In this document: piece after piece, positions 1,053 to 53,572 of the stretch | Layout: every line of letters starts with the position of its first letter | Numbering within the stretch: position 1 is the stretch's first letter | Sequence record: OV032902.1 | Strand: one strand, 5' to 3' | Length of the DNA: 64,000 bases | Translations under genes and position numbers: made by a program | Notes under the pieces: model-generated | What the model saw: only the letters and a program-made list of their open reading frames with translations | Database searches by the model: none | What the model was told of the DNA's origin: nothing

Positions 1053-3562
<2,510 letters not shown>

Positions 3563-8447: not shown

Positions 8448-9495
8448 TAATTCGTAGCCCCTTCTAGGAGTAATCCTAGTCGATCACCTCTCTAAACGAA
8501 GGAAGTCCCATGTGGACAACTATCGTGCTAAATTAAATCAATGTCCTCCAATTAAAAACAGGAGGCATCTATGGGAAAATGGATATCTCTTGAAGAAGTT
8601 CAAGAAATAAATAAGGCTATTCAAAAACATACTGATCCAGAAATAAGAAAGAAATTTAATATCACTAAGCGTCAACTGGACTCACTTAAAAGTAATTACG
8701 GTCTAGTGAGAAACTGGTGGCTTTTCTTTCCTACTTTTCCTGGAGAAATATGGAAACGAATAAGAAATTCCGATACGGCGGTTTCTAACCTGGGAAGATT
8801 CAGAAGACTTAGGTCTGGAAAAATAATCCAACCATGGGAAGGAAGCAAAGGAAAATATCTTTATCTGGAAATAACCAAAGATAAAGAATTAAAAACCGTT
8901 CTTGCGCACCGCATGGTGGCAATTTCTTTCGTTAAAAACCCAAACCCCAAAACCAAAAAAGAAGTTAACCATCTGGATGGCAATAAAAGAAACATTTTGC
9001 CAGAAAATCTAGAATGGTGTACCCCAGAAGAAAACGTTCGACATGCTATAGAAACTGGCCTGAAGAAACCTAATCTGGGATTAAGTAACGGAATGTCTAA
9101 ACTCAGTCTGGATGAAGTCATAGCTATACGGTCGTGTACTACCAGCAGAAGAGTTAAAGAACTTTCTAAAACTTTGAATGTCAATGAAAAGACGGCGTTA
9201 AAGTGTTACTACAAATTAACTTATTTGGATATTGATTTATAAAAGCGTAACGACTATCGAAAGCATAACATAAGAGAAAGACTTATGTGAAGAAGCGAGT
9301 AGAGTACGGCCCAAGTGGGTGGACGTGAGAGTCCTTAAATGGAAATGGGAGGGAGCCTTTAGTTGGTAAAAGATTAAAGGTTCATGACATAGTCTCGACA
9401 GCAATTTCTTTGGGAATGGAAATTGTATTCTATGGTAACATAGAGCTGCGCGTAATGGCGCGGGTCAGAAGTAACGATTCTGACTGAAGATATCG
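8448..9495 (+). mobile_element. Group I self-splicing intron (1048 nt) with homing endonuclease
   Basis: P1 GGGU|UA-AUUCG-UAGCCC with U.G at the splice site; P4/P6-like CTCTAAACGAAGGAAG and CGTGCTAAAT; P7 GACTA (9252) pairs with TAGTC (9390); terminal G9495; splicing restores in-frame HTG-VVQFLK. Confidence 0.92.
8571..9242 (+). CDS. Intron-encoded HNH homing endonuclease (NUMOD4 + HNH, I-HmuI-like)
   Basis: VSNLGR, HRMVAISF..NP...EVNHLDGNKRN...NLEWCT.EEN..HA; GGAGG RBS; AT-richer, AGA/AAA-rich codon use. Confidence 0.92.
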   Translation: MGKWISLEEVQEINKAIQKHTDPEIRKKFNITKRQLDSLKSNYGLVRNWWLFFPTFPGEIWKRIRNSDTAVSNLGRFRRLRSGKIIQPWEGSKGKYLYLEITKDKELKTVLAHRMVAISFVKNPNPKTKKEVNHLDGNKRNILPENLEWCTPEENVRHAIETGLKKPNLGLSNGMSKLSLDEVIAIRSCTTSRRVKELSKTLNVNEKTALKCYYKLTYLDIDL

Positions 9496-10950
9496 GTCGT
9501 ACAATTCCTTAAGGTATTCGAAGCAGCGACTGGTTCATGTGCACAAGGCGGTATCCGTAAAGGTTCTGCGACTTCTTACTACCCGTTCTGGCACCGTGAT
9601 GTTCTAGAGTTCCTACCGCTTAAGAACAACCGTGGTACAGAAGAAAACCGCGTACGTCACCTAGACTATGCAATCCAATGGAACCGTCTATTGTTCGAAC
9701 GCATTAAAGCAGGTAAAGAACTAACCTTGTTCTCTCCGGCAGATGTTCCTGAGTTGAAGAAACTATTCTTCTCTGACGACTACGAAGGCTTTAAAGCTGA
9801 GTACGAGCGTTGTGAAGCACGTGACGATTTAATCGTTGAGAAAGTATCTGCTCTTGAGCTAATGCAAATCTTTATCCGTGAGCGTTCACAAACTGGTCGT
9901 TACTACTTCCAAGATGCTTACCACACAAATGCACATACACCGTTCAATCCAAAATATGCACCTGTGCGTCAGTCTAACCTGTGTCTAGAGATTGCTCTAC
10001 CAACTGAGCCTCTTGTACGCAACGTAGACGACGAAGATGCAGAGATTGCACTGTGTACTCTGTCTGCACTTAACTGGCTGGTTATCAATACCGAAGAAGA
10101 GATGGAAGAAATCTGTGACATCGTTATTGAAGCATTGGATATGGTTCTGTCTTACCAGGACTACCCACTGGCTGCGGCTGAGCGTTCTGTTCGTAAATAC
10201 CGTCCACTTGGTGTTGGCGTAATCAACTACGCTGCTGACATTGCACGTCACTCTTGGAAATACGGTGACCGTGAAGCATTGAACTACACTCACCGTAAGA
10301 TGGAAATGATGCAGTACTACTTAATGAAAGCATCTGTTCGTCTAGCGAAAGAGAAAGGTCGCTGTGACGGTTACGAAAACCTAAACATCGCTAACAACAA
10401 GCTGGTGATTGATTCATACTGTAAGAACGTTGACGAACTACACGACGAAGTTCTACATATGGATTGGGATAGCCTGCGTAAAGATATCGACAAGTACGGT
10501 ATCCGTAATGCAACAGTAACTGCCCTAATGCCATCTGAAACTTCTTCTCAAGTTGTTGGCGCTACCAACGGCATCGAGCCACCACGTAGCTACGTAACAG
10601 CTAAGAAGTCTAAGTCTGGTGCATTGTCGCTAGTTGTTCCTAACCCTGAAAAGCATTTGCATGATTACACTTATGCTTGGGACATGCCGAACAACAAAGG
10701 TTACCTACATACGGTTGCGGTATTCCAGAAGTTTGTTGACCAAACTATCTCGGCTAACTTCTACTACGACCCTAAGAAGTACCCTAACGACTTGGTACCA
10801 ACTAAGGTCATCATGGCCGATATGGCTCTATGTCAGAAGTATGGCATCAAGACCGGTTACTACCACAATACCCGTCCAGCTGGCGAAGATAAGATGACTA
10901 TCATCGACGACGCTACAGAGGACTGCGGTGGCGGCGGTTGTAAAATCTAA
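9496..10950 (+). CDS. nrdA: Class Ia ribonucleotide reductase alpha subunit, exon 2
   Basis: SCAQGGIRKGSAT, LKNNRGTEENRVRHLDY, SNLCLEI, ALCTLSA, RPLGVG, MPSETSS, NGIEP, KTGYY, C-terminal CGGGGCKI; spliced product 760 aa. Confidence 0.95.
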   Translation, partial: VVQFLKVFEAATGSCAQGGIRKGSATSYYPFWHRDVLEFLPLKNNRGTEENRVRHLDYAIQWNRLLFERIKAGKELTLFSPADVPELKKLFFSDDYEGFKAEYERCEARDDLIVEKVSALELMQIFIRERSQTGRYYFQDAYHTNAHTPFNPKYAPVRQSNLCLEIALPTEPLVRNVDDEDAEIALCTLSALNWLVINTEEEMEEICDIVIEALDMVLSYQDYPLAAAERSVRKYRPLGVGVINYAADIARHSWKYGDREALNYTHRKMEMMQYYLMKASVRLAKEKGRCDGYENLNIANNKLVIDSYCKNVDELHDEVLHMDWDSLRKDIDKYGIRNATVTALMPSETSSQVVGATNGIEPPRSYVTAKKSKSGALSLVVPNPEKHLHDYTYAWDMPNNKGYLHTVAVFQKFVDQTISANFYYDPKKYPNDLVPTKVIMADMALCQKYGIKTGYYHNTRPAGEDKMTIIDDATEDCGGGGCKI

Positions 10951-13183: not shown

Positions 13184-15700
13184 ATGAACAATCGAGACTT
13201 TCTCGTTCGCTTGAAAAAGACCGACCGCGATGGTGGCGATTACCTTAGTTGGGTAGTTTGGCCATCAAGCAATACACAGAACCTTCCTTCTGTGGTTGAG
13301 TCTTATGACGGCAACAAGTCTTACCCTGCTGGTATCTTCATTAACTATGAAGGTGCACTTTACAAATCTAATTCCAATGTTCCTGTAGGTTCTTGGGATG
13401 CCGCTAAATGGGATTCAGCTGAAGGCTACGAAGCGTACATTACGCCGCACAGTACTAATCTGGATTATCCTGCTGACTCAGTTATCTATGACGCCAACGG
13501 TGATCTATGGTATCTAGAAGACGCTGCTGCGAAAGGTTTGTTTGAAGACCAAGCATGGGTTAAGTTAACACCTGAAGAAAAGATCGAGACAGCGGTAGCT
13601 TATCTTGACCCTAATTCTCAGGTAGAAGCACCACGTGTTATTCGTGGTTCATTCGTAGATGTTGAAAAGACAGCAGTAGACCTACTAGGTATTGCGCTTG
13701 CTTACTACGATGCTTCTGACAAGTACACTCTTTTCCAGGACGTGTCTGGTAGTGTTCCAGTAACAACTCCTGGCCAATACGTTCGTTACATCTCTGACCA
13801 AATCGGTGAGAACGACGTCGTTATCAATGCGGCTATTCCACCTGTATATCGTGAAGATGCTAACGGTCGTGGTTTCCTAGAGAATGCGGACGGTACTAAC
13901 TTTAGCATTCAATCAGCTGGTGAAACTACTGCGGCACAAGTGTATCAGGCTATTCCAAATGTGGGCGTACTACGTTCTGCTGCTGGTAACCTAGATGCAG
14001 GCTTTGATGCTAAACCTTCTGAACAGGCTAATGTTCCTTTCACTCAAGCAGTTATCGTTGATGCAGCAGCTTCAGCAGAAGACCAAGACAAAGTGATCAT
14101 GGAACTACGTCGTTTCTCTAACCGTTACGACAACGGTGTTCTTACTAGTCTTAGCTACTTCTTCCGTGAGCAAACTGCTGGTTACACTTTCGTTGGTGAA
14201 GTAAACCTACGTAACGTGTTTACTCTGCGCGGCATGTTCTTTGCTTCTGAAGTAATTGAAGATCTAACAACTTGGGATGTTTCTAAAGTTGAAGACTTCT
14301 CTGAAATGTTCTGTGAGTCTACAGGTACGATCGACCTGTCTGGCTGGAATACTGCTTCTGCTAAGTACATGGACTCAATGTTCGAAAACAACACAGTGTT
14401 TGATTCTCCTATCTCTACACTGAATGTTTCTAGCGTTATTTCTGCTCGTCGTATGTTTGCTGGCGCTACTGTCTTTAACCAAGACATCACAGCACAAGAG
14501 TGGACTGCTCTTAACTATGCAGATGAAATGCTAGCAAACACAACTGTTTACGATACAACAGTTACGGGCTTTACTGCTCCTGCTCTTGTTGCAGCTAATG
14601 GTTTCTTGCGTAATGCTATTGCATACAACCAAGTAACGACGCTAAGTCTTCCGTCATTGACTACAGCACAGAACTTCTTTGAAGGCGCTACGCTAATGTC
14701 AAGTGACATCACTATCAATGCGATTGACTTGGTAAACATTAGTGCGTTCTTGCGTGACGTTACAGACTTCTCTGCTCGTGTACAGTTTAGCTCTACTGCT
14801 ATTACTGTTGCCGATGAAGCATTTAAAGGCTGTTCTCGCTTCAACGCTGCATTGAACATCAACATGGAAAACATCGTATCAGCTATCTCTATGATGGAAG
14901 GTTGTGCATCGTTCAACCAACCATTGGAAATTAGTCCTGCTAATATCCTAACAGCTAGCCGCATGTTCCATGGCTGTACTAGTCTAGTAACACAGCCGTT
15001 CACTTCACTGTTCTTTGAAGCTGCTACAGACATCGACTTCTTGTTCTATGACTGTGGTGCTTTGACAGCTGACCTAAGTGACATCCAAGCTCCATTTGCA
15101 GAGTCTCTTGAATCCATGTTCGAGAACTGTATTGGTGTTACTGGCCAAGTAACGGTTAACGCACGTAATGCTACAACTGCCCTTAACATGTTTAAAGGCT
15201 GTTCTGCATTCAACGGTCGAGTTGACATGACTCTGTACCGTGCAACAACTATCGAGTCTATCTTCGAAGAGTGTCTAATGCTTAACGACGATGTGACTAT
15301 CAACGCTCCTCGCTTGACGAGTGTTAAAGCTGCTTTCCGTGGCTGTGATGTAATGACTGGTAACATTATGATTACCACTGCTCTAGTTACAGACTGGTCT
15401 AGCTTCCTTGAGAATGCTCTCGTATGGAATGCTCCTCTGTTACTGGACATGACGTCTATCACTACAGCTGGTGCGATGTTTAAAGGTGCTGTAGCATTTA
15501 ATGCTGACATCTCTAACATCCCTCTGAATGACATCACTGACTTGACTGAGTTCTTGTCTGGCGCAACGGCGTTCGATCAGGACCTTTCTACTCTTTGTGT
15601 AGAGAAGCATCCTGTAATGCCTGCTGACTTCGTTTCTGAAGACATGCCATTCTTTACAGATACAGCTAAGCACCCTCAATGGGGCATTGCTTGTGCATAA
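13184..15700 (+). CDS. BspA / DUF285-type repeat protein, probable virion-associated adhesin
   Basis: Tandem ~25-aa repeats (WDVSKVEDFSEMF, WNTASAKYMDSMF, MFAGATVFNQDI, FKGC..FN); two aromatic N-terminal modules; TLFQDVSG..PVT..GQ.V module; C-terminal FDQDLS.LCV...P.WG. Confidence 0.8.
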   Translation: MNNRDFLVRLKKTDRDGGDYLSWVVWPSSNTQNLPSVVESYDGNKSYPAGIFINYEGALYKSNSNVPVGSWDAAKWDSAEGYEAYITPHSTNLDYPADSVIYDANGDLWYLEDAAAKGLFEDQAWVKLTPEEKIETAVAYLDPNSQVEAPRVIRGSFVDVEKTAVDLLGIALAYYDASDKYTLFQDVSGSVPVTTPGQYVRYISDQIGENDVVINAAIPPVYREDANGRGFLENADGTNFSIQSAGETTAAQVYQAIPNVGVLRSAAGNLDAGFDAKPSEQANVPFTQAVIVDAAASAEDQDKVIMELRRFSNRYDNGVLTSLSYFFREQTAGYTFVGEVNLRNVFTLRGMFFASEVIEDLTTWDVSKVEDFSEMFCESTGTIDLSGWNTASAKYMDSMFENNTVFDSPISTLNVSSVISARRMFAGATVFNQDITAQEWTALNYADEMLANTTVYDTTVTGFTAPALVAANGFLRNAIAYNQVTTLSLPSLTTAQNFFEGATLMSSDITINAIDLVNISAFLRDVTDFSARVQFSSTAITVADEAFKGCSRFNAALNINMENIVSAISMMEGCASFNQPLEISPANILTASRMFHGCTSLVTQPFTSLFFEAATDIDFLFYDCGALTADLSDIQAPFAESLESMFENCIGVTGQVTVNARNATTALNMFKGCSAFNGRVDMTLYRATTIESIFEECLMLNDDVTINAPRLTSVKAAFRGCDVMTGNIMITTALVTDWSSFLENALVWNAPLLLDMTSITTAGAMFKGAVAFNADISNIPLNDITDLTEFLSGATAFDQDLSTLCVEKHPVMPADFVSEDMPFFTDTAKHPQWGIACA

Positions 15701-15817: not shown

Positions 15818-16612
15818 ATGAAAACAGATATCACTCTTCTTAAGCTAGCTGGTCTTGGTCTTGACTTTTACTTGGTTCAAAGCGTTCTTAAAGAAGGCAT
15901 GCTAGGTAACGTCGAAACTGCTAAAGGTCCACTTGCAGACAAAATCCGTAAGCGTCTTCGTTTCGGTGAAGGTCTTCAGTACCGCATCATCGATCGTGTT
16001 AACTCAACACACCACGCGCTTAACAATACTGTCGCTGGCCTTGGCTACAAACCTTACCGCCCATCTGGCGAGAAAGTTTACTGTCTGTTCCTTGACACTG
16101 CTTTCCGCGAAGTAGACCGTAACGGTGCACTGTTGTTCCAGAAGCCTTCTGATACATCAATGCCTGTTGAAGTTACTTGCTTCGATGAGAAAGGTAAGCG
16201 TCGTGTAACAATCGACCCGAATGGTAAAGAGTGTCTTCGCTGGCAACGTAGCAAGAAAGGCATTACTCGTAGCAATCGCGTTGATAACAAAACATTCCGT
16301 GCTAACCTTCGTGAAAACGAGTTCCTTGGTGAACACTCTGAAACTAAGGTATTTACTTCTGAGCGCATTGGCGGTAACGAGACTTCTCGTCACGTGGTTG
16401 AAAACGATCACATGATCATGATCTCTCACACCGACCAAACTGCACGTCTTACTCAGCACCTGTTGACTAAAGACGGATTCGGTCAAGTTACTTCTATCCT
16501 TAACGTTAACAAAGGCGTAGAAGACATTTACCAATACGGTACGTTTGAAGACACAGTCATCATCGTTCGTAACGGTAAGAAAATCCTAGAGATGGAAGTG
16601 GAGAAAGCGTAA
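15818..16612 (+). CDS. Hypothetical early protein
   Basis: GAGGA RBS, 264 aa, strongly biased (highly expressed-like) codons. Confidence 0.8.
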   Translation: MKTDITLLKLAGLGLDFYLVQSVLKEGMLGNVETAKGPLADKIRKRLRFGEGLQYRIIDRVNSTHHALNNTVAGLGYKPYRPSGEKVYCLFLDTAFREVDRNGALLFQKPSDTSMPVEVTCFDEKGKRRVTIDPNGKECLRWQRSKKGITRSNRVDNKTFRANLRENEFLGEHSETKVFTSERIGGNETSRHVVENDHMIMISHTDQTARLTQHLLTKDGFGQVTSILNVNKGVEDIYQYGTFEDTVIIVRNGKKILEMEVEKA

Positions 16613-17301
16613 TGGAAGTTATGTACAATCCTACGGCGATCATTAGTTTGATCGTCCTTTGTGTTTTCTTTCTTTGTATGTGGTGGATTGTCTGGTGCTG
16701 CTATTCAGATACCAAGAAAGAGCTAAGTTCTACTCGTAGCCGCAACCGTGAACTGGAACGAAAACTTGAGCGCGTAAACACCTTTATTGATTTGCTAGAT
16801 ACTAAGCACTGTAAAGGTCCTTTACGTCAATTGTTTCAAACAGGTGATCGTGCTGACCACATCATTGATGCTTCCAAAAGCCTGACTGATGTAACAAGCT
16901 ATATTCCGGTTTGCTACATTATCTGCGGTCAAGTGAAACCACAGCATCTTAAGATGTTCACTACTCGTTGTTGGGTTTATGATAACCTTGGTCATCACAC
17001 CATCGGTCAAAACCTTACGAACCATGTTTACACCAACAAAGCCATTCCTGGCTGGACTATGGCTGCGGCTCTAGTGCATCCGGATGACATAAAAGAAGTG
17101 GAGCAGTATCTAGTTTCTAATCATAGTCGCTATGCCGTGTACTATGGGACAGGACAGGGTCGCTTTAACTCTTTGGTGCGTGGACGTGGAGCTGATGCTT
17201 TGGCAATGGATATCGGTGAAGCTATCAATAACGCAATATCTTATCATCCTCTACGAAACATCGTAGAGACTGCATTTAAACATGAACTGGAGACCAAGTA
17301 A
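16612..17301 (+). CDS. Hypothetical protein, N-terminal TM + coiled coil
   Basis: TM AIISLIVLCVFFLCMWWIVW then heptad stretch; TAATG coupling. Confidence 0.75.
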   Translation: MEVMYNPTAIISLIVLCVFFLCMWWIVWCCYSDTKKELSSTRSRNRELERKLERVNTFIDLLDTKHCKGPLRQLFQTGDRADHIIDASKSLTDVTSYIPVCYIICGQVKPQHLKMFTTRCWVYDNLGHHTIGQNLTNHVYTNKAIPGWTMAAALVHPDDIKEVEQYLVSNHSRYAVYYGTGQGRFNSLVRGRGADALAMDIGEAINNAISYHPLRNIVETAFKHELETK

Positions 17302-17975
17302 TGGAAAACTACTTGATTGGCGTGATCGTCCTTTTGTTGATGATTATGGTTGTGATGTGCTGCTACGCAGTTAATCGCATTGGTACCTGGGGAGCAAAAG
17401 TCAGCGGTATAGAAAGCCGAAAGCTTGAGCTGGAAGAAGAGGTAGCGAAGTTAACTGCGATCAATGAAGAATATAACAGAATCAAAACATGTTCTGTCTA
17501 TATGGAAGATAACCCTGACATCTTCGAAAGTCTAGCCAAGCGATTGACTCCTATGGATTTCATCGAAAGCATGTCCTCTGCCGGATTAATAGAAGGCAAG
17601 CATCCGTATATCCTTGTTGCTCGCAGTGGTATCAATGCCAACTTCTCAAATACCAAGACTCACAAATTGGCAGTCATCAACGGTACTTTCTTTGAGAACG
17701 TCATGCTCGAAGCGAAGATACAAAAAGACGGTTGGTACATTGAGTTTGGTTTTGCACATGCAAACGAGATCGTAGATAAGGCAGATGATATCGGAAACAA
17801 TCATGGTGCTTATCGTCTATTTACACGCGGTCACTCTTTGCGTTCTTCTGGTTCTGGCGCAATGGTTGGAGCTTATCCTATTGTGAGTCAGGCGCTACAT
17901 ATTAGCATTGGTACTCCGGTACTAGTTAGTTTGCGTGATGAACTATTGAGAACTTTAAAGGAGTTTAATCAATGA
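17301..17975 (+). CDS. Hypothetical protein, N-terminal TM + coiled coil
   Basis: TM LIGVIVLLLMIMVVMCCYAV then RKLELEEEVAKL. Confidence 0.75.
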   Translation: MENYLIGVIVLLLMIMVVMCCYAVNRIGTWGAKVSGIESRKLELEEEVAKLTAINEEYNRIKTCSVYMEDNPDIFESLAKRLTPMDFIESMSSAGLIEGKHPYILVARSGINANFSNTKTHKLAVINGTFFENVMLEAKIQKDGWYIEFGFAHANEIVDKADDIGNNHGAYRLFTRGHSLRSSGSGAMVGAYPIVSQALHISIGTPVLVSLRDELLRTLKEFNQ

Positions 17976-18631
17976 CAAACACTACAGTTGTCATCATTGC
18001 TCTGATTGTATTGGTTTGTGCCCTAGCTTGGGCACTTAACCGAACGCTACGTCAGAAGCGTGAGTTGGAAGAGCGAATGCCTAACATCCAGCATTTCGCT
18101 GACCGTTGGTTCAATCTAACTAAAGCTTGTTCTCGTCTAACTGTCCTAAAGGGAGGACGAGAGTGGCTAGAGTATCGCCTGGTTAATTGCCAGTTTGAGG
18201 AAATCACGAAAGCAATTACCTTAGGGGCTGATATCAAGAAGCGTTACTTTATCCTGTTTTATTGGGACAAAGACGCGCGCGATAAAATGCCTGTCGGTTC
18301 TTCATCTGAGGAAGCTTACTTCCGTGGACATGGTCGATGGTACGGTTGGGATTATTGGGATAGAACTCGCTTGGTTCGTTCCGGTATTAACAAGAACACT
18401 TATGTTCGTCAGTTCTATGACTACGATGACGTAGAGTTCAACGACTTTATCGGCAAGCTTCAGCAAGCTGGTATCTCTTTTGTTGCCGCTAGTCCTGATG
18501 GAGTTACGCGCCCCAACGAAAAAGAGTCAATCTGTATTCCTTCCAATATAGCAGATATGCCTCCTGGCTACTGGCACGAAATGGAAGACATCATCGACCG
18601 AGTAACGCCTGGTGCATTAACTCGCTCATAA
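17972..18631 (+). CDS. Hypothetical protein, N-terminal TM + coiled coil
   Basis: TM VVIIALIVLVCALAWAL then RQKRELEER; ATGA overlap. Confidence 0.75.
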   Translation: MTNTTVVIIALIVLVCALAWALNRTLRQKRELEERMPNIQHFADRWFNLTKACSRLTVLKGGREWLEYRLVNCQFEEITKAITLGADIKKRYFILFYWDKDARDKMPVGSSSEEAYFRGHGRWYGWDYWDRTRLVRSGINKNTYVRQFYDYDDVEFNDFIGKLQQAGISFVAASPDGVTRPNEKESICIPSNIADMPPGYWHEMEDIIDRVTPGALTRS

Positions 18632-18699
18632 AAAACACCCACATGCAATCATGTGAACAAAACCACTAAACCACTAAAACAAAGAAAAAGGAGATCCTC

Positions 18700-19002
18700 A
18701 TGGACCCACGTAAAACGGCAGAACTACAAAACGACGCAACTGTTGGTGAGCTAGTTGAAGAAGTAACTCGTGAAGCAACAGCTGAAGAACTGAAAGACCT
18801 TAACGAAGCGCAAGAAGTTGCAGCGACTCAAGACGAGATTGCTGAACTTATGGCAGCTATGGGTCAAGGTGGTCTGCAACAAGGTAAAGGTCGTCTACGC
18901 GGTCCTGGTCTAACTCGACCAGTATTCAAGAAAACGACTGCACGTGCTAAAGGTAAAGCAGCACGTCTAGCGCGCCGTACTACTCGCCTAACTCGCAAGT
19001 AA
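18700..19002 (+). CDS. Small bipolar protein (acidic N-terminus, very basic C-terminus)
   Basis: AAGGAG RBS; 15 D/E in first 50 aa; 15 K/R and no D/E in last 39 aa. Confidence 0.8.
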   Translation: MDPRKTAELQNDATVGELVEEVTREATAEELKDLNEAQEVAATQDEIAELMAAMGQGGLQQGKGRLRGPGLTRPVFKKTTARAKGKAARLARRTTRLTRK

Positions 19003-19021
19003 TACAAGCACTCCGGTGAAC

Positions 19022-19070
19022 ATGACAGGGCTCGGTTGAGTCCTGTCATACTCTTATTTTATTTTTTCTT
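19022..19070 (+). terminator. Terminator-like hairpin upstream of rnl
   Basis: ATGACAGGGCTC-GGTT-GAGTCCTGTCAT then a T-rich tract. Confidence 0.65.
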
Positions 19071-19085
19071 TTGGAGAACTCTACA

Positions 19086-20297
19086 ATGAGTAAACGTCAA
19101 CGCAATACTTTTCGTCTGAATCCTGAGCAAGAGAAACAAGCAGCTAAGATGGCTGCAACGTTCGCTTGGAATTCATGTAACTTCTTGGCAGGTACTATTG
19201 CGCCTGCATCAGCTGACGCAGCTGCTAATGACATCGAATCCATTGAACTAGCATTTGAACAGTTCGCTAAGCTCGACCCAGAAATGGAGTTGATCGTTCA
19301 GGTTAAACACATGGGCTCTCGTGCTACCCTTTATCTACATCGTGACTTTGAGAAGTCTTACGCAACTACGCGTAATGGTTTCCAGATTAAACCGCGTGAA
19401 GGTAAAGAAGCAGCTACGCGCGAAGAGCTACATGCTAATCCAGATCTATGCGATCGTTACTTGCGTATTCGTGAAGCTATGTATGCACAGTGGAAGAAAG
19501 TCTACGGCGATGACGGCTGGGCTTTCGATACTACTGACGTAGTTATCTTGGATACAGAACTAATGCCATGGTCAATCATTGGTAAAGACCTCATCAAACG
19601 TGAGTTCACAGAATACGCAGAAGTGCATCGTTACGAAGACACCATGATCGAACAGCTTGGTTTCTACAGTCAACATTCTTCCCGTAACGAAGAAGCTGCG
19701 CGTGGTCTACAAGACCGTTTGCTAACAGCACGTCATGGTCTAGAGCAATTCGAACAACAAGTCGATATCTTTGGTGCCGACGATCAAGTCGAGTTCCGTC
19801 CGTTCAACATCCTTAAGTATGTTCGTAACGACGGTACTGAAAAGGTTGTCATGGATAACAACTTGCATAACTACGAAATCGTGGGCGATGCTCCATTTGC
19901 AGTAGTTAAAGCGGGTGACTGGGAAAGCAACGATTCTCTTAAGCTTCTACAGAACTATGTTCAGAAGTTTAATATGGAAGGCGTTGTCATTAAGCCAGCT
20001 ATTTATCCTGAAGGTCCTTGTGGTGTTCCGCCGTACATCAAAGTGCGTAACCCTGATTACTTGCACATCATCTACGGTCACGAATACCGCAACATCATTG
20101 CACTGAAAAAGCTAATCAGTAAGAAAGACATCCACAACAAGCTTAATGCTTCTATTAAGCAGTACCAGATGGGCCATGAATTACTTGGCATTTCTTACGC
20201 GTCTATTTCACCTCAGTCTGATACGTACTTTGAAAAGGTACGCGAAATCATTCGTCGTGTTATCCTAGACGAGCAATCAATCGACCCTGCACTTTAA
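19086..20297 (+). CDS. rnl: RNA ligase of the bacterial Pnkp/Hen1 (Pnkp1-Rnl-Hen1) family
   Basis: NFLAGTIAPA, motif I QVKHMGSRA (K74), TRNGF, LDTELMPWS, FRPFNILK, MEGVVIKP, KVRNPDYL.IIYG, C-terminal IDPAL. Confidence 0.88.
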   Translation: MSKRQRNTFRLNPEQEKQAAKMAATFAWNSCNFLAGTIAPASADAAANDIESIELAFEQFAKLDPEMELIVQVKHMGSRATLYLHRDFEKSYATTRNGFQIKPREGKEAATREELHANPDLCDRYLRIREAMYAQWKKVYGDDGWAFDTTDVVILDTELMPWSIIGKDLIKREFTEYAEVHRYEDTMIEQLGFYSQHSSRNEEAARGLQDRLLTARHGLEQFEQQVDIFGADDQVEFRPFNILKYVRNDGTEKVVMDNNLHNYEIVGDAPFAVVKAGDWESNDSLKLLQNYVQKFNMEGVVIKPAIYPEGPCGVPPYIKVRNPDYLHIIYGHEYRNIIALKKLISKKDIHNKLNASIKQYQMGHELLGISYASISPQSDTYFEKVREIIRRVILDEQSIDPAL

Positions 20298-20314
20298 TCA
20301 CCGGAGTATAAACA

Positions 20315-22495
20315 ATGTTAGTAACTATTAAAAGCAATAAGCCAGGCATCTCTTACGCAGTTGGTAAAAATCCAGCAGCAGGTATGCAAGTAGCAGTGTG
20401 TCGCGAAGGCCAAGCGGCGTCTTGGTACCACGATGAAACATACTGCATGTTGTTCCGTGACGGCATCAACAAAAACTCTTTCGCTAAGAAAGAATTCAAC
20501 TATCTTACTCAAGATGGTGTCCTATGTCCTATGGCAGCCAACGTACTTATCTCTACGGCTAACAAGTCGATCATGACAAGTAACTCTGGCGATAAGGCTA
20601 TCTACTCTGTAGAGCTTGCACAGGTGCAAATCAAGCGCCTTAAAACCGTAGAGCATCTAATGGCTCACTTTGGTGATGAGTGGACGTTTGTTCTTGACGA
20701 GCTTTCTGAGTTCCGCTGTTACCGCTTCGAGCTTGCTCCTAAGACAGAACAACCTCTAGGCAAAGTACTGCGCTTCGTTTGTATGCTTACGATGTTCCTT
20801 TCTTCGAAGGAAGAGTTGAACCTGTCTAAGCTAGATGATTCATTCATTAACCGCTACATGGGTTACTTGGACGAGTTTAATGCTCCTTACTTCGTTCGTT
20901 ACGTATTCGTACGTAACTTGTTTGATTACCCAGATCAATTCGAACGTCGTGAGCATCTGATCAACAAAGACCCGGAAATGGTTTTCCACTTTGGCGATAC
21001 TGGTCGTCAACGTATGGAAGCTATCAAGAAAGTCCTTCCTTGTATGGACCGCATTCTTGACTTGGGCTGTGGTGAAGGTAAAGTACTTTCTAATCTTGTT
21101 CGCTACAAGCAACAGATTGAAGAGTATCATGCGGTAGATATCGACGAGAACGTTCTTGCTGAGGCACAAACAGCAGCTCGTAAAACGCGCTCTGAGGTTG
21201 ATTTCCATTTCCATGGTAACTTGGATGAGTTCTTGACCAATCAAGGTGCTATGAACTTTACAGAGATTCTGTGTACGGAAGTAATCGAACACATGCCTCT
21301 GGAAGAAGCAGAAGCCCTAATCATCAAACTGTTAACAGAAGTTAACTGGACTAAAGCGGTATTCACCACACCTAACAAGTCGTTTAACAAAAACTATTTG
21401 CTAGGCGATGACGAGTTCCGTCATGACGACCATGATTGGGAAATGACTGTTGAAGAGTTCAACGAATGGTTTACTTCGGTAATGGATAAAGTTCCTGGCG
21501 CAGTTAGCTTTGAATGGTTCCCTATCGGTGACCGTGTGGGTGAAGAGCCAACGTCACAGGGCTTTGTTGTTCGCAACCAAGATCTACCTAAGCGCGCTAT
21601 CCTGACTATTGGTGCTCCTGGTTCTGGTAAGTCGCTATGGGCTTCTCGCTTCGATGACGATCATAACTGGATTGAAATCAACCGTGACATTGCTCGCTTT
21701 GGTCGTGGTAAACCTAAAGACTGGACACAGTACGAGTTCTGTCCTAAGAACGAAGCTATCGTTACTAAGAAGATCAATGCATCTCTTAAGAAAGCTTATC
21801 GTCTAGGTCGTAACATCATCTGTTCGGACACAAACCTAAATGACTTCTTCCGCACCAAGTTCGTAGACGAGCTAAATGCACAGGGTTACTTAGTTGAGTT
21901 CCGTTACTTTGATGTGGCGCTAAAAGAACTTATTCGTCGCAATGAAAACCGCCAAGGTGGTATTCCGTACGAGTCAGTTCTTAACTACTGGCACCGCATG
22001 CAGATGTTAACTCGTCCTGATCTACATGGCCTAAAGGTTTTAAACAAGCAAAACCAATACGCTTGTTACTGTGTAGACTTGGATGGTACTTTGTTTGATA
22101 TCCAAGATCGCCCTGGATATGAAGAGCATCGCTGTGACGAAGACAAAGTCAACGAGCATGTTGCATCTATTGTTCGTGGTCTATTGCTTGGCGGAAACGA
22201 AGTTGTGTTTACGTCCGGTCGTCGTGAAATGGCACGTGAGAAATCACTGAAGAAGATCGAAGAAGCACTAGGTCCTGATCTAGCAGGCCCTGCTTACGAG
22301 TGGTCTTTGAAGATGCGTGCTAACGATGATTCACGTCAAGATGCACTAGTCAAAATCGACATGGTGCGCGAATTGATTAGTTCTGACAAGTACGTCGTAG
22401 CAGCCATCGATGACCGTAAACAAGTTGTTGAAGAGTGCTGGTCTCTACTTGACATTCCTGTATTTAACATCGGTAAACCAACCGAGCGTTTTTAA
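20315..22495 (+). CDS. hen1: Hen1-Pnkp1 fusion: ligase-activating domain + RNA 3'-terminal 2'-O-methyltransferase + polynucleotide 5'-kinase + HAD 3'-phosphatase
   Basis: N-terminal SY...KNP..GM, PYFVR, FGDT..QR; MTase DLGCGEG (D249), EVIEH (322-326), TTPN, FRHDDH.WE; kinase LTIGAPGSGKS (433-440), NRD, DTNLN; HAD DLDGT (588), TSGR, AIDDRKQVV. Confidence 0.9.
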   Translation: MLVTIKSNKPGISYAVGKNPAAGMQVAVCREGQAASWYHDETYCMLFRDGINKNSFAKKEFNYLTQDGVLCPMAANVLISTANKSIMTSNSGDKAIYSVELAQVQIKRLKTVEHLMAHFGDEWTFVLDELSEFRCYRFELAPKTEQPLGKVLRFVCMLTMFLSSKEELNLSKLDDSFINRYMGYLDEFNAPYFVRYVFVRNLFDYPDQFERREHLINKDPEMVFHFGDTGRQRMEAIKKVLPCMDRILDLGCGEGKVLSNLVRYKQQIEEYHAVDIDENVLAEAQTAARKTRSEVDFHFHGNLDEFLTNQGAMNFTEILCTEVIEHMPLEEAEALIIKLLTEVNWTKAVFTTPNKSFNKNYLLGDDEFRHDDHDWEMTVEEFNEWFTSVMDKVPGAVSFEWFPIGDRVGEEPTSQGFVVRNQDLPKRAILTIGAPGSGKSLWASRFDDDHNWIEINRDIARFGRGKPKDWTQYEFCPKNEAIVTKKINASLKKAYRLGRNIICSDTNLNDFFRTKFVDELNAQGYLVEFRYFDVALKELIRRNENRQGGIPYESVLNYWHRMQMLTRPDLHGLKVLNKQNQYACYCVDLDGTLFDIQDRPGYEEHRCDEDKVNEHVASIVRGLLLGGNEVVFTSGRREMAREKSLKKIEEALGPDLAGPAYEWSLKMRANDDSRQDALVKIDMVRELISSDKYVVAAIDDRKQVVEECWSLLDIPVFNIGKPTERF

Positions 22496-22501
22496 CCACG
22501 T

Positions 22502-22519
22502 GGGGCTTCGGCCCCTTTT
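22502..22519 (+). terminator. Terminator closing the RNA repair operon
   Basis: GGGGC-TTCG-GCCCC-TTTT. Confidence 0.7.
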
Positions 22520-22530
22520 GGAGAACAACA

Positions 22531-23793
22531 ATGAATATCAAACCTATCTTTGATTCATACCATCATGGCGATGAACATGTCGTTACTAACACGGCACTTA
22601 AAAACGCCAACCTGTTCAAAGAGTATCTAAAGCTCAAAGACCACTTCTCTGAATCGCTGAAAGCTTTCACGATTACATTTGAAGACTTCCTTGAAATTGA
22701 TACTCCGGCGCTAAAGATCATGCTTCTTAACCGTCTTATCAATCGTCGTCTTTGGGAAGAAACTTATGACCATGAGTTTTCTTTCACTGAAAAAGAACGT
22801 ACTGAATTGTGGACCATGGAAAAGAAACTATTCGATCAAGTTCGCGATAGTCTAGATTCAAAATCTGTGGGCTCATACATTGGTACGCTTCCTACGATTG
22901 CAGCTATTGATGAGTTTGCAAAAGAATGGAATGCGTTAGATATGTTCCTTTCTCCTACGATCTGTATGGAGCGTTTGCTTTACAGCCTTCCTCGCAAGCT
23001 TACCGAAGGCGATGGTTTCTCTGAGCGCATTGCTCACATTACCAAAGTGATGAAAGTCAACAACGGCAATGTTAACACTCAGTCAGAAATCGAAGAATCG
23101 GCTAAGGTTAAAAAGTACATCCTGGAAGACTCTGAGTTGGACTTTGCTACAATCCAAGTTGCTTCTGTTCGCTCAATGCTTGTACTGGCTAATCGCATCA
23201 AACTTGACGATGGCCAATTCGATCGTGCTCTAGCTATTCTAGAATTCCTTGCTCCTAAGCTTGGAAATAACTGGGCGGCTACCAATGCGATTGGCTTCAA
23301 TAACAATAGCATTGATTCAACTGAACGCATGAAAAAGTACGACGAGTTCCTCAAGGCTCATTCGCCTCTTGAAGTTCTTGACGTTAAGACATGGGAAGTA
23401 GTAGGCAAAGACATTACGGCTAAGCTGATAGCTGATTCAATTAAGGCGGAAGTATCTGATAAAGGTACTATTACTGTCTTTGGTCTTGGTAACATTGCTG
23501 AGTTCTATGAAATCCCTATCGTAGAAACCAACAAGTTTTTTGATGATGCTTCGCTTAGAAAAGCCTGTGAAACTTACATCAAGAAACATGGCTTCTTAAT
23601 GCTGGATGCATCGCATCGTCATATCGGTAAGATGATTGACTGGAACTCCATCGATACTCTGATGTTGGAGCTAGGCGAGAAACACTTGGTTATCACCAGC
23701 CGTCTATGTTTCCGCATTGGCGTTCGAAAAGGTTCTCAGCGCATCGAGCACAAACTGACTCGTAAAGGTCTTACGTTCAGTCTGCGCAAATAA
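22531..23793 (+). CDS. Hypothetical protein
   Basis: GGAG RBS, 420 aa, no recognised motif. Confidence 0.8.
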   Translation: MNIKPIFDSYHHGDEHVVTNTALKNANLFKEYLKLKDHFSESLKAFTITFEDFLEIDTPALKIMLLNRLINRRLWEETYDHEFSFTEKERTELWTMEKKLFDQVRDSLDSKSVGSYIGTLPTIAAIDEFAKEWNALDMFLSPTICMERLLYSLPRKLTEGDGFSERIAHITKVMKVNNGNVNTQSEIEESAKVKKYILEDSELDFATIQVASVRSMLVLANRIKLDDGQFDRALAILEFLAPKLGNNWAATNAIGFNNNSIDSTERMKKYDEFLKAHSPLEVLDVKTWEVVGKDITAKLIADSIKAEVSDKGTITVFGLGNIAEFYEIPIVETNKFFDDASLRKACETYIKKHGFLMLDASHRHIGKMIDWNSIDTLMLELGEKHLVITSRLCFRIGVRKGSQRIEHKLTRKGLTFSLRK

Positions 23794-23797
23794 CATC

Positions 23798-23840
23798 TAG
23801 CCTATCTGCCTTCGGGCAGATAGGTTATTTATTTTGATTC
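23798..23840 (+). terminator. Terminator
   Basis: TAGCCTATCTGCC-TTCG-GGCAGATAGGTTA then TTTATTTT. Confidence 0.8.
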
Positions 23841-23851
23841 TGAATTGTTTT

Positions 23852-23867
23852 TTATCTCTATATTACC
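23852..23867 (+). promoter_or_regulatory. phiKZ-type early promoter (TTATCTCTATATTACC)
   Basis: 16-mer identical to 36661-36676; contains TATATTAC. Confidence 0.75.
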
Positions 23868-23908
23868 TTTATGAGTTTATTGGATATAAATCACAAAGGA
23901 GATTTATC

Positions 23909-24274
23909 ATGGGTCACAAAACATTACAAGCTTTATCTGACTTTGGTTTTCGAGTCAAAGTATCTGGAACATCCGATCTTGGCGAAAGCGGCATTCGCTT
24001 TAAAGTAAAGATCACAACAACCAACGATCGTTCGGTTGAATTCCAACAGGGTTCTTGTTTAACTAGTCCTTATGGTCTCATTACTTTACTTAACGGCCAA
24101 AAGGTAGAAAACCTATCTAAGATGGCATATGGCAAACTGGAAGATATGTTCGAACGTGTCGCTAAACAGAATGGCGGTCGACTTGTTGCGGTAACTTACG
24201 ATAAGTTCGGCAATCGCTCTGAAGCTGATCTTACCCATATCCTAAAAATCATCGGAGAAGAAAACAATGCTTAA
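23909..24274 (+). CDS. Hypothetical early protein
   Basis: AAGGAG RBS before ATG 23909. Confidence 0.75.
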   Translation: MGHKTLQALSDFGFRVKVSGTSDLGESGIRFKVKITTTNDRSVEFQQGSCLTSPYGLITLLNGQKVENLSKMAYGKLEDMFERVAKQNGGRLVAVTYDKFGNRSEADLTHILKIIGEENNA

Positions 24275-24656
24275 TCTAATAATTGTTATCGTCTGGGCAG
24301 TAGCCTTTTCAGTTGGCGGCTTTGTCGCTATTGACTCTGCACTAGAACTAACTGGACACTATGCAGTAGTCATGAAGATTCTTCTGGTTATTGCAGTTGT
24401 ACTTGTGGGTAAATTCTATATTGCCTACACTAAAGAACCAAAGAAAGAATATCTGCAATCTATGCTCTGTCTTATGATTGTGGTTTTCCCTTTCTTTCTT
24501 CTAGGCGTGGACTATCGATTCATCGAAGTATTCGAATGGGCCGAATGGAATAAAGATATGGCGGGTGCTGTTATGACCGTCGGCTGTGTGCTTGCTTTCG
24601 TGTTTGCTATCCTTATGGATAACTGGCACGATCGCAAGTATCCACAAAAGAAATGA
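24267..24656 (+). CDS. Four-TM membrane protein
   Basis: 129 aa, four hydrophobic segments. Confidence 0.75.
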   Translation: MLNLIIVIVWAVAFSVGGFVAIDSALELTGHYAVVMKILLVIAVVLVGKFYIAYTKEPKKEYLQSMLCLMIVVFPFFLLGVDYRFIEVFEWAEWNKDMAGAVMTVGCVLAFVFAILMDNWHDRKYPQKK

Positions 24657-53556: not shown

Positions 53557-53572
53557 TTTAATCACCTTAAAG

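What the first reader, a model, noticed from the sequence alone, without database searches (positions are those of the whole stretch)
19086..22495. Phage-encoded repair-and-immunise RNA system: Rnl plus a Hen1-Pnkp1 fusion
Seen: two adjacent genes (17-nt gap, closed by a UUCG terminator) carry all four active sites of bacterial RNA break repair. These are a ligase (KHMGSR, EGVVIKP, KVRN), a Hen1 methyltransferase (DLGCGEG, EVIEH, RHDDH), a P-loop kinase (GAPGSGKS) and a HAD phosphatase (DLDGT, DDR). Known: in bacterial Pnkp/Hen1 and the three-protein Pnkp1-Rnl-Hen1 complex of Capnocytophaga, broken RNA is healed, 2'-O-methylated at the junction and sealed, so the same ribotoxin cannot recut it. 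T4 Pnkp/Rnl1 repairs without methylation. Inference: this jumbo phage counters host anticodon nucleases or other RNA-cleaving defences and leaves repaired RNA resistant. That would matter for a phiKZ-like phage whose DNA may be shielded but whose RNA is exposed. I cannot tell from the window whether phage copies have already been reported.
Basis: partly seen in the sequence, partly recalled or inferred. Interest (0 to 1): 0.92.

Follow-up and report, generated by a model that had tools for sequence, protein, structure and literature searches.

The report
Phage RNA repair-and-methylation gene pair
A giant, nucleus-forming Vibrio phage carries two adjacent genes holding all four enzyme activities needed to mend cut RNA and methylate the mended site against re-cutting; this is a rare fused, phage-borne version of a known bacterial repair system, probably used against host defences that cut tRNA.

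Summary
The window is Vibrio phage vB_VpaM_sm033 (320 kb), a phiKZ-like phage with a nuclear-shell protein homologue.

- **Gene 1 (19086-20297):** a full-length homologue of the stand-alone RNA ligase Rnl of the Capnocytophaga Pnkp1-Rnl-Hen1 complex (PDB 4XRP, E 1.6e-40).
- **Gene 2 (20315-22495):** one 726-aa chain joining a complete Hen1 to a T4-type polynucleotide kinase / HAD phosphatase. Hen1 contributes its ligase-activating N-domain and its 2'-O-methyltransferase.
- **Active sites:** every quoted motif is present. The catalytic positions are kept in 15 of 15 fused relatives, or 13-14 of 15 at five positions, and in 10 of 10 ligases.

The fusion is real but rare. It forms 12 clusters among 1.84 billion representative proteins, and among 50,697 phage records it occurs in two (sm033 and Vibrio phage RYC). 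No cellular genome showed it. Rnl lies directly upstream in all 11 contexts read, and the domain junction has a near-fixed length.

The heal-methylate-seal function is inferred from homology, and the counter-defence role is not tested. A looser Hen1 and ligase set was noted in phage XacN1 in 2018, so this is a new variant of a known kind. RNA repair is reportedly uncommon in phiKZ-like phages, and sm033 has no tRNA genes.

The parts
19022..19049 (+). Strong hairpin (12 pairs) followed by a T-rich tract up to about 19070. It is the likely terminator of the preceding gene and so the upstream boundary of the two-gene unit.
   Evidence: -20.7 kcal/mol, z -6.5, 0 of 200 shuffles fold as well.
19086..20297 (+). 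rnl: a 403-aa stand-alone ATP-dependent RNA ligase of the Pnkp C-terminal ligase type. It carries the motif I lysine K74, motif III D156/E158, motif IV E298-G299-K303 and motif V K319/R321.
   Evidence: Pfam PNKP_ligase 1.4e-28. PDB 4xrp_B E 1.6e-40 over nearly the full length. AF2 model pLDDT 79.5, top folds 4xrp_B/4xru_B at E 2.6e-21, TM 0.63-0.67. The listed residues are invariant in 10 of 10 phage Rnl homologues.
20298..20314 (+). 17-nt intergenic spacer with a GGAG ribosome-binding site at 20303-20306. No hairpin lies between the genes, so they are probably co-transcribed (inferred).
20315..22495 (+). hen1-pnkp1 fusion gene: one uninterrupted 726-aa ORF.
   Evidence: The same collinear architecture occurs in 15 proteins from different sources.
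20321..20962 (+). Hen1 N-terminal domain (residues 3-216). In the bacterial systems this domain binds and activates the ligase.
   Evidence: Pfam Hen1_N E 2.3e-34. Fold match to full-length 4xrp_C/F with target TM 0.77-0.78. Its role is taken from PMC4411300.
21005..21535 (+). Hen1 3'-terminal ribose 2'-O-methyltransferase domain (residues about 231-407). The SAM motif is at G251-C252-G253 and the metal-site residues are E322, E325, H326 and H373.
   Evidence: TIGR04074 region match 4e-23. PDB 4xrp_C, 3jwg, 3jwh and 3htx. The listed residues are kept in 15 of 15 fusions, C252 in 14 of 15.
21590..22009 (+). T4-type polynucleotide 5'-kinase domain (residues about 426-565). The P-loop spans 433-440, and D458, R461 and R542 align with T4 Pnk D35, R38 and R126.
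   Evidence: AAA_33 2.8e-12. phrog_505 polynucleotide kinase 1.3e-58. 1ltq alignment. 15 of 15 conservation.
22064..22471 (+). HAD-type 3'-phosphatase domain (residues 584-719). It has the DxDxT motif at 588-592, S634/R636, K680 and D699-D700.
   Evidence: Pfam HAD_PNKP 4.8e-25. PDB 5uj0 and 1ltq. 15 of 15 conservation.
22502..22519 (+). A 5-bp GC stem with a UUCG loop, followed by TTTT. It is a possible terminator closing the pair. The next gene starts at 22531.
   Evidence: -14 kcal/mol, z -1.86. It does not pass the scan.

Best explanation
The two genes encode a complete heal-methylate-seal RNA repair machine of the Pnkp1-Rnl-Hen1 ('hybrid') type, packed into two polypeptides.

**Shown by sequence and fold**
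- Four catalytic modules are present with intact active sites: a 5'-kinase, a HAD 3'-phosphatase, a Hen1 2'-O-methyltransferase and an adenylyl-lysine RNA ligase.
- The Hen1 N-domain, which activates the ligase in the bacterial systems, is also present.
- The ligase gene always travels with the fusion gene.
- The methyltransferase runs into the kinase through a connector of about four residues whose length is almost fixed.

**Inferred from the characterised homologues (T4 Pnkp; Pnkp/Hen1; CgPnkp1-Rnl-Hen1, PMC4411300)**
1. An RNA cut by a metal-independent ribonuclease has 2',3'-cyclic phosphate or 3'-phosphate and 5'-OH ends.
2. The phosphatase clears the 3' end and the kinase phosphorylates the 5' end.
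3. Hen1 methylates the 2'-OH of the 3'-terminal nucleotide.
4. Rnl, held and activated by Hen1_N, seals the nick.
5. The junction then lacks the 2'-OH nucleophile and cannot be re-cut at that site.

**Inferred from context**
- Translation of a nucleus-forming phage takes place in the host cytoplasm, and sm033 has no tRNA genes of its own. The likely substrates are therefore host tRNAs, or possibly rRNA, cut by abortive-infection or anticodon nucleases.
- The cassette would be an accessory counter-defence that moves between unrelated phage lineages.
- The fusion probably makes permanent a Pnkp1-Hen1 contact that is weak in the bacterial complex.
For: **Identity of the parts:** by sequence and by fold. 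The Rnl model's best match is 4xrp_B. The fusion model's best matches are 4xrp_C/F for residues about 1-420 and T4 Pnkp / 4xrp_A for the rest.

**Catalytic positions:** 15 of 15 at 22 of the 27 positions checked and 13-14 of 15 at the other five in the fusions. 10 of 10 in the ligases.

**Linkage:** Rnl lies directly upstream of the fusion in 11 of 11 contexts, from two unrelated phage backgrounds plus metagenomic contigs. The other neighbours are not shared between lineages. Identity of Rnl and of the fusion fall together across lineages.

**Junction:** 28 residues from the GDxV landmark to the P-loop in 12 of 15 fusions, 27-29 in two and 34 in one. pLDDT is 90-94 across the junction.

**Bacterial complex (PMC4411300):** all three proteins are needed for repair in vitro, Hen1 activates Rnl, and the Pnkp1-Hen1 contact buries only about 700 A2 and is not seen in solution.

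**Phage context:** a nuclear shell homologue, no tRNA genes in 320 kb, and a separate NAD-dependent DNA ligase at 1616-3562. Nucleus-forming phages are known to be exposed to RNA-targeting immunity (papers listed).
Against: - No activity, expression or RNA-modification data exist for any phage Hen1 system.
- The host nuclease that would make the cassette useful is unknown and could not be searched for here.
- The closest isolated relatives lack the cassette, so it is dispensable for this phage type.
- RNA repair is reported as less common in phiKZ-like phages.
- The near-absent linker might force a geometry different from the bacterial heterohexamer, and the oligomeric state could not be tested.
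- The NCBIfam equivalog models for bacterial Pnkp and Hen1 are matched only well below their cut-offs, so this is a distant branch.
- The downstream terminator is weak.
Confidence: 0.7

Rival explanations
1. The chemistry is the same but the enemy is different. The cassette would protect the infected cell's translation apparatus against ribotoxins delivered by competing bacteria (colicin-like or contact-dependent toxins), or against nucleases of co-infecting phages, rather than against the host's own abortive-infection nucleases.
For: The bacterial Pnkp/Hen1 and Pnkp1-Rnl-Hen1 systems are discussed as generic protection against ribotoxins released by neighbouring species, with little substrate specificity (PMC4411300). 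Nothing in the window points to a particular host nuclease.
Against: The infected cell survives only until lysis, which leaves little time for protection against outside toxins to pay off. The one phage precedent, T4 Pnkp with Rnl1, counters a host anticodon nuclease (background cited).
Confidence: 0.1
2. The pair serves programmed RNA processing or 3'-end protection rather than damage repair. Hen1 would methylate the 3' ends of particular phage or host RNAs to stabilise them, as eukaryotic HEN1 does for small RNAs. The kinase-phosphatase and ligase would tidy or join ends made by the phage's own nucleases.
For: The methyltransferase domain also matches eukaryotic HEN1 and small-RNA 2'-O-methyltransferases (3htx, 5wy0, 4xcx). 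The phage encodes its own ribonuclease (record gene SM033_00151).
Against: The Hen1_N ligase-activating domain and the obligate pairing with Rnl in 11 of 11 contexts argue for methylation coupled to sealing. Rfam found no structured RNA in the window, and there are no tRNA genes or tRNA introns to process.
Confidence: 0.1
3. The pair acts on DNA ends. The T4-type kinase/phosphatase and the ligase would heal and seal nicks with 3'-phosphate or 5'-OH ends in phage DNA, with the methyltransferase as a passenger.
For: T4 Pnkp acts on DNA as well as RNA, and PDB entries 1rc8, 1rpz and 1rrc show it bound to single-stranded DNA.
Against: Hen1 chemistry needs a ribose 2'-OH. The ligase belongs to the RNA-repair Pnkp-C/Rnl clade. 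The phage already has an NAD-dependent DNA ligase. The methyltransferase active site is conserved in 15 of 15 fusions, so it is not a passenger.
Confidence: 0.04
4. The pair is a recently acquired cargo without function in this phage.
For: It sits in a region with no DNA or protein match in any other isolated phage. The nearest isolates lack it.
Against: Both reading frames are intact and all active sites are kept. The pair persists at 33-55% identity across 11 contexts with a fixed junction. Its G+C content is like its surroundings.
Confidence: 0.03

Closest known systems
[quoted passage not shown]
   Same: It has the same three module types: a stand-alone Pnkp-C-type ligase, a Hen1 with its N-domain and methyltransferase, and a T4-like kinase with a HAD phosphatase. 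CgRnl is the best solved match for gene 1 (E 1.6e-40). CgHen1 is the best solved match, by sequence and by fold, for the first 420 residues of gene 2.
   Different: - Here Hen1 and Pnkp1 are one chain joined by about four residues, giving two proteins instead of three.
- The genes are adjacent, whereas in those bacteria hen1 lies far from the pnkp1-rnl operon.
- The carrier is a phage, not a bacterium.
- Identity is only about 22-28%.
- The kinase-phosphatase half is closer to T4 Pnk (104.8 bits) than to CgPnkp1 (70.8 bits).
Canonical bacterial Pnkp/Hen1 (Clostridium thermocellum, Anabaena variabilis)
   Same: The logic is the same: heal, 2'-O-methylate, seal. Hen1_N pairs with a ligase of the same fold (3ty5/8/9, 4drf, 4e6n). 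The closest stand-alone Hen1 found by the profile search sits in such an operon.
   Different: The phosphatase there is a binuclear metallophosphoesterase inside a single trifunctional Pnkp of about 850 aa. Here it is a HAD domain, and the ligase is a separate protein. The NCBIfam equivalog scores fall far below their cut-offs: 92.6 against 750 for Pnkp and 81.6 against 340 for Hen1.
Phage T4 PseT (Pnkp) with Rnl1, the classical phage tRNA repair pair
   Same: The kinase-HAD phosphatase half is of this family (1ltq E 3.6e-29; phrog_505 1.3e-58). That family is present in 1,670 phage records. The presumed purpose, undoing tRNA cleavage during infection, is the same.
   Different: T4 has no methyltransferase, so the repaired RNA can be cut again. 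Its ligase is of the Rnl1 family (PF09511, as beside P0032), not the Pnkp-C/Rnl type.
Vibrio phage RYC genes VCPH_00185/00184 (AP014858)
   Same: The architecture and gene order are identical: Rnl followed by a 717-aa Hen1-Pnkp1 fusion. It is the only other isolated phage with this arrangement.
   Different: Identity is 33-37%. The genome is 158 kb, and the genes flanking the pair are not shared with sm033. The genes are annotated only as 'hypothetical protein' and 'polynucleotide kinase'.
Xanthomonas phage XacN1 ORF199-197 and Stenotrophomonas phages CM1 and RAS14
   Same: These are jumbo phages with a Hen1 (N-domain plus methyltransferase) next to a stand-alone Pnkp-C-type ligase. The XacN1 pair was already noted in print.
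   Different: - All genes are separate and the order is kinase, Hen1, ligase.
- The kinase is a lone AAA_33 protein of 164-176 aa.
- No phosphatase domain was found within 5 kb.
- XacN1 carries 56 tRNA genes, whereas sm033 has none.
- The gene called 'PNKP' in that paper is ligase-only.

Membership tests
Pnkp1-Rnl-Hen1 hybrid RNA repair system | A stand-alone ligase homologous to the C-terminal ligase domain of bacterial Pnkp, with the adenylylation lysine and nucleotidyltransferase motifs | tested here: met
Pnkp1-Rnl-Hen1 hybrid RNA repair system | Hen1 with an N-terminal ligase-binding domain and a C-terminal metal-dependent 2'-O-methyltransferase | tested here: met
Pnkp1-Rnl-Hen1 hybrid RNA repair system | End-healing by a T4-like P-loop kinase fused to a HAD (DxDxT) phosphatase, not a metallophosphoesterase | tested here: met
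   No Metallophos hit.
Pnkp1-Rnl-Hen1 hybrid RNA repair system | Three separate polypeptides | tested here: not met
   Hen1 and Pnkp1 are one 726-aa chain. The fusion is conserved in 15 sequences.
Pnkp1-Rnl-Hen1 hybrid RNA repair system | Heterohexamer of two rings joined at a Pnkp1 dimer | not testable with these tools
   Only single chains could be modelled.
Pnkp1-Rnl-Hen1 hybrid RNA repair system | Repair of ribotoxin-cut RNA needs all components and leaves a 2'-O-methylated junction | not testable with these tools
   This is a biochemical property. It is known for the bacterial complex.
Canonical bacterial Pnkp/Hen1 | Trifunctional Pnkp (kinase, metallophosphoesterase, ligase) in one protein | tested here: not met
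   TIGR04075 scores 92.6 bits against a cut-off of 750, and only profile positions 463-820 are matched.
Canonical bacterial Pnkp/Hen1 | Hen1 reaching the equivalog score of TIGR04074 | tested here: not met
   81.6 bits against a cut-off of 340.
T4-type Pnkp-Rnl1 tRNA repair | PseT-type kinase/phosphatase | tested here: met
T4-type Pnkp-Rnl1 tRNA repair | An Rnl1 (PF09511) or Rnl2 ligase partner, and no methyltransferase | tested here: not met
   The ligase is of the PNKP_ligase type, and a Hen1 methyltransferase is present.
phiKZ-like nucleus-forming jumbo phages (carrier of the cassette) | Nuclear shell protein, split multisubunit RNA polymerases and the divergent family B DNA polymerase | tested here: met
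   phrog_4795 at E 1e-25. The polymerase subunit genes are taken from the record's annotation. divDNApol homologue at 45% identity to BONAISHI ORF69. Virion protein family.

The most novel reading that the evidence does not exclude
The fused cassette would be a phage invention. A T4-type PseT was welded to a Hen1 captured from a bacterial Pnkp/Hen1 operon, together with its ligase. The result would be an obligate two-protein ring that moves between unrelated phages. The puzzling 'hybrid' three-protein system of a few oral Capnocytophaga would then descend from such phage cassettes rather than the reverse. In nucleus-forming phages the cassette would give lasting, site-specific immunity of host tRNA or rRNA to the RNA-cutting defences, which are these phages' main remaining weakness.
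Probability: 0.25. Interest if true: 0.75.

Novelty: new variant of a known kind. Interest (0 to 1): 0.6.

Why it matters
RNA repair that also blocks re-cutting has been studied only in bacteria, and its natural role there is still unknown (PMC4411300). A phage copy gives it an obvious biological setting: infection under attack by tRNA-cutting defences.

The fusion works as a natural 'Rosetta stone'. It supports the weak Pnkp1-Hen1 contact seen only in the crystal, and it suggests the order of steps is hard-wired.

For nucleus-forming phages, whose DNA is shielded but whose translation depends on cytoplasmic host RNA, this would be a counter-defence aimed at the exposed layer. It may help explain host-range differences among otherwise similar phages.

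It also corrects annotation. 'Hypothetical protein' and 'polynucleotide kinase' in sm033 and RYC hide a four-activity system, and XacN1's 'PNKP' is a ligase only.

Tried and rejected
- **A conserved third component downstream.** The genes of about 420-439 aa that follow the fusion in several contexts are unrelated to one another. One is an AAA/BCS1-like ATPase and the others have no Pfam hit. BLASTP E values were 1.3-5.9, and sm033's has no match in any other isolated phage.
- **Phage tRNAs as substrates.** ARAGORN finds none in the window or in the rest of the 320-kb record.
- **Structured RNAs nearby.** There are no Rfam matches at gathering score in the window.
- **A shared regulatory motif.** The 10-mer ahead of gene 1 and of the gene after the pair occurs only twice in the window, so it is not a motif family.
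- **An empty-site comparison with the nearest isolates.** The region 16600-24300 has no DNA match in other phage records, so no clean presence/absence junction could be shown.
- **Fused forms in cellular genomes.** The scan of 185,579 species representatives found only separate Hen1 or separate Pnkp. It used just two peptide patterns and is not exhaustive. The exhaustive profile search carries no taxonomy. Of the eight full-length hits that were new in that search, the only one with a source name is phage RYC.
- **Literature.** The comparative survey of RNA repair systems by Burroughs & Aravind (2016) is not held in the library. I could not check whether it mentions this fusion.

Full report
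**What is there**

The window is a stretch of Vibrio phage vB_VpaM_sm033 (OV032902.1, 320,253 bp). Window position equals record position minus 62,000.

On the + strand, an ORF of 403 aa (19086-20297) is followed, after exactly 17 nt, by an ORF of 726 aa (20315-22495). Both have a GGAG a few bases ahead of the ATG. The record calls them 'hypothetical protein' and 'polynucleotide kinase'.

**Identity of gene 1**

- It matches Pfam PNKP_ligase (E 1.4e-28).
- Among solved structures, its best match is the stand-alone ligase Rnl of the Capnocytophaga gingivalis Pnkp1-Rnl-Hen1 complex. The match has E 1.6e-40 and covers residues 23-383 of 403.
- That is far better than its match to the ligase domain of Clostridium thermocellum Pnkp (about E 1e-10).
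- An AlphaFold2 model (mean pLDDT 79.5) finds the same order by fold: 4xrp_B/4xru_B at E 2.6e-21, then the CthPnkp ligase entries, then generic DNA and RNA ligases much lower.
- In an alignment of ten phage-borne homologues, these residues are invariant: the motif I lysine (K74), G77, R79, R96, G98, D156, E158, E298, G299, K303, K319 and R321.

**Identity of gene 2**

Pfam places four domains in order along the protein:

| Domain | Residues | E-value |
|---|---|---|
| Hen1_N | 3-216 | 2.3e-34 |
| Class I methyltransferase | about 231-407 | |
| AAA_33 kinase | 429-548 | 2.8e-12 |
| HAD_PNKP | 584-719 | 4.8e-25 |

Solved-structure matches are T4 polynucleotide kinase (E 3.6e-29, residues 426-717), CgHen1 (E 3.1e-27, residues 151-419) and CgPnkp1 (E 6.8e-19). 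PHROG 505 'polynucleotide kinase' covers residues 427-721 (E 1.3e-58).

The model has mean pLDDT 83.3 and pTM 0.68. It matches full-length CgHen1 with target TM 0.77-0.78, and it matches T4 Pnkp / CgPnkp1 with the remainder.

The residue-by-residue alignments show where the two parts meet:

- CgHen1 ends three residues after the point aligned to residue 419.
- CgPnkp1 begins nine residues before the point aligned to residue 424.
- The phage protein therefore joins the two almost end to start, with a connector of about four residues.

**Is the fusion real and under selection?**

A profile of seven fused proteins was scored against all 1.84 billion representative proteins. It found exactly 12 full-length matches. 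The score then drops sharply from 578 to 358 bits, to stand-alone Hen1 proteins of about 425 aa.

Together with closer relatives, this gives 15 distinct fused sequences. The conservation counts are:

| Site | Positions kept in 15 of 15 | Exceptions |
|---|---|---|
| SAM site | G251, G253 | C252 in 14 of 15; D249 in 13 of 15 |
| Methyltransferase metal site | E322, E325, H326, R369, D372, H373 | H370 in 14 of 15 |
| P-loop and kinase | G433, G438, K439, D458, R461, R542 | S440 in 13 of 15; R457 in 14 of 15 |
| HAD site | D588, D590, T592, S634, R636, K680, D699, D700 | none |

The spacing across the junction is 28 residues in 12 of the 15, 27-29 in two and 34 in one. An assembly or annotation artefact is excluded.

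**Linkage**

An Rnl gene lies immediately upstream of the fusion in all 11 genomic contexts that could be read:

- sm033 itself.
- Vibrio phage RYC.
- One IMG/VR contig of 180 kb.
- Eight metagenomic contigs.

Three contigs are syntenic with sm033 over the whole neighbourhood. The others share nothing but the pair. The similarly sized downstream genes are unrelated to one another.

Identity of Rnl and of the fusion fall in step across lineages, from about 54/49-68% down to about 33/29-40%. The pair therefore behaves as a two-gene module that moves between phage backgrounds.

**Rarity**

Among 50,697 GenBank phage records, only five have any Hen1 or Rnl-type ligase. They are sm033, RYC, XacN1 and the Stenotrophomonas phages CM1 and RAS14. 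Only the first two have the fusion.

By contrast, the kinase-phosphatase half has homologues in 1,670 records.

In XacN1 and RAS14 the set is a lone kinase, Hen1 and a ligase-only protein. No phosphatase lies within 5 kb.

A pattern-limited scan of 185,579 species genomes found only separate Hen1 genes (next to full-length Pnkp in Listeria, Saccharibacillus and Enterococcus) or separate Pnkp genes.

The closest stand-alone relatives point to the two parent systems:

- The nearest Hen1 sits in a bacterial Hen1-Pnkp operon beside RtcB.
- The nearest kinase-phosphatase sits beside a T4 Rnl1-type ligase.

The cassette is therefore a true hybrid of the bacterial and the T4-type repair systems, as was said of the Capnocytophaga complex.

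**The carrier phage**

- sm033 has a homologue of the phage nuclear shell protein (phrog_4795, E 1e-25).
- Its record annotates several split RNA polymerase beta-type genes.
- It has the divergent family B polymerase typical of phiKZ-like phages, at 45% identity to BONAISHI.
- It has a phiKZ-type virion protein family.
- BONAISHI has two multisubunit polymerase sets and a tubulin (PMC6207643).

The whole genome has no tRNA gene, and the window has no Rfam match. A separate NAD-dependent DNA ligase lies at 1616-3562. The nearest isolates (vB_pir03, C-ZP2022, BONAISHI) lack Hen1 and Rnl. The region around the pair has no match in other isolates. G+C content is unremarkable.

**Boundaries**

A strong hairpin with a T-rich tail (19022-19049, z -6.5) precedes gene 1. 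No hairpin separates the two genes. A short GC stem with a UUCG loop and four T (22502-22519) follows gene 2, but it is only modestly better than shuffled sequence. Co-transcription is likely but is inferred.

**How it most likely works**

This follows the characterised homologues:

1. The HAD domain removes the 2',3'-cyclic or 3'-phosphate.
2. The kinase phosphorylates the 5'-OH.
3. Hen1 methylates the terminal 2'-OH.
4. Rnl, bound and activated by Hen1_N, seals the break.
5. The methylated junction cannot be re-cleaved by transesterifying ribonucleases.

In the bacterial complex, Pnkp1 and Hen1 touch over only about 700 A2 and do not associate in solution. The phage fusion replaces that weak contact with a covalent, length-constrained link.

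Since sm033 brings no tRNAs, the substrates would be host tRNAs or rRNA in the cytoplasm, where a nucleus-forming phage's messages are translated. None of these steps was measured. They rest on conserved active sites and on the published biochemistry of relatives.

**Comparison with what is known**

- The system works like, and is closest to, the Pnkp1-Rnl-Hen1 complex, but it fails that system's 'three polypeptides' description.
- It is not a canonical Pnkp/Hen1. It has no metallophosphoesterase, and its equivalog scores are far below the cut-offs.
- It is not the T4 Pnkp-Rnl1 pair. The ligase family differs and a methyltransferase has been added.

Prior mentions of phage or element-borne Hen1 sets exist: XacN1 in 2018 and Borgs in 2024. 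The large jumbo-phage survey by Iyer et al. discusses kinase-HAD proteins and Rnl1, Rnl2 and RtcB ligases. It does not contain the word Hen1, and it reports RNA repair as less common in the phiKZ-like group. I found no report of the fusion. One relevant survey could not be read.

**Verdict**

The counter-defence role remains an inference. This is a new, fused and phage-borne variant of a known RNA repair system. It is rare, conserved and mobile, and it sits in a phage type where such systems are unusual.

Noticed in passing
window 7620-10950: The ribonucleotide reductase alpha gene is annotated in two pieces (7620-8450 and 9691-10950) with an HNH endonuclease gene (8571-9242) between them. This suggests a homing-endonuclease-bearing intervening sequence. 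Rfam found no group I intron at gathering score.
   Followed up: partly
L039:1985-3103 and L050:2858-3997: Two metagenomic contigs with the fused cassette carry an extra protein of 372-379 aa two genes upstream of Rnl. Its only recognisable domain is Hen1_N, so it may be a second ligase-binding partner without a methyltransferase.
   Followed up: partly
whole record OV032902.1 (window plus L043-L048): ARAGORN finds no tRNA gene anywhere in this 320-kb jumbo phage.
   Followed up: yes
record OV032902.1 305434-319195 (outside the window; L047:29434-43195): About 13.7 kb near the right end of the record has no annotated gene.
   Followed up: no
L003:4427-7501 (XacN1) and L004:4394-7611 (RAS14): The gene published as XacN1 'PNKP' is a ligase-only protein. 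A separate 164-176 aa AAA_33 kinase lies upstream of Hen1, and no phosphatase domain lies within 5 kb. This is a third arrangement of the system in phages.
   Followed up: yes
window 47323-53565 (- strand): A 2080-aa ORF next to tail and virion protein genes has no PHROG match at E 1e-5.
   Followed up: no
window 13184-15700 and L005, L006, L041: A large DUF285-repeat protein (838 aa here, up to about 1240 aa in relatives) and three small genes upstream are syntenic with the cassette in the sm033-like metagenomic contigs.
   Followed up: partly
L002:3901-3928 (RYC): Similarity to Rnl begins upstream of the annotated start of RYC gene VCPH_00185, so that gene may be annotated too short.
   Followed up: no
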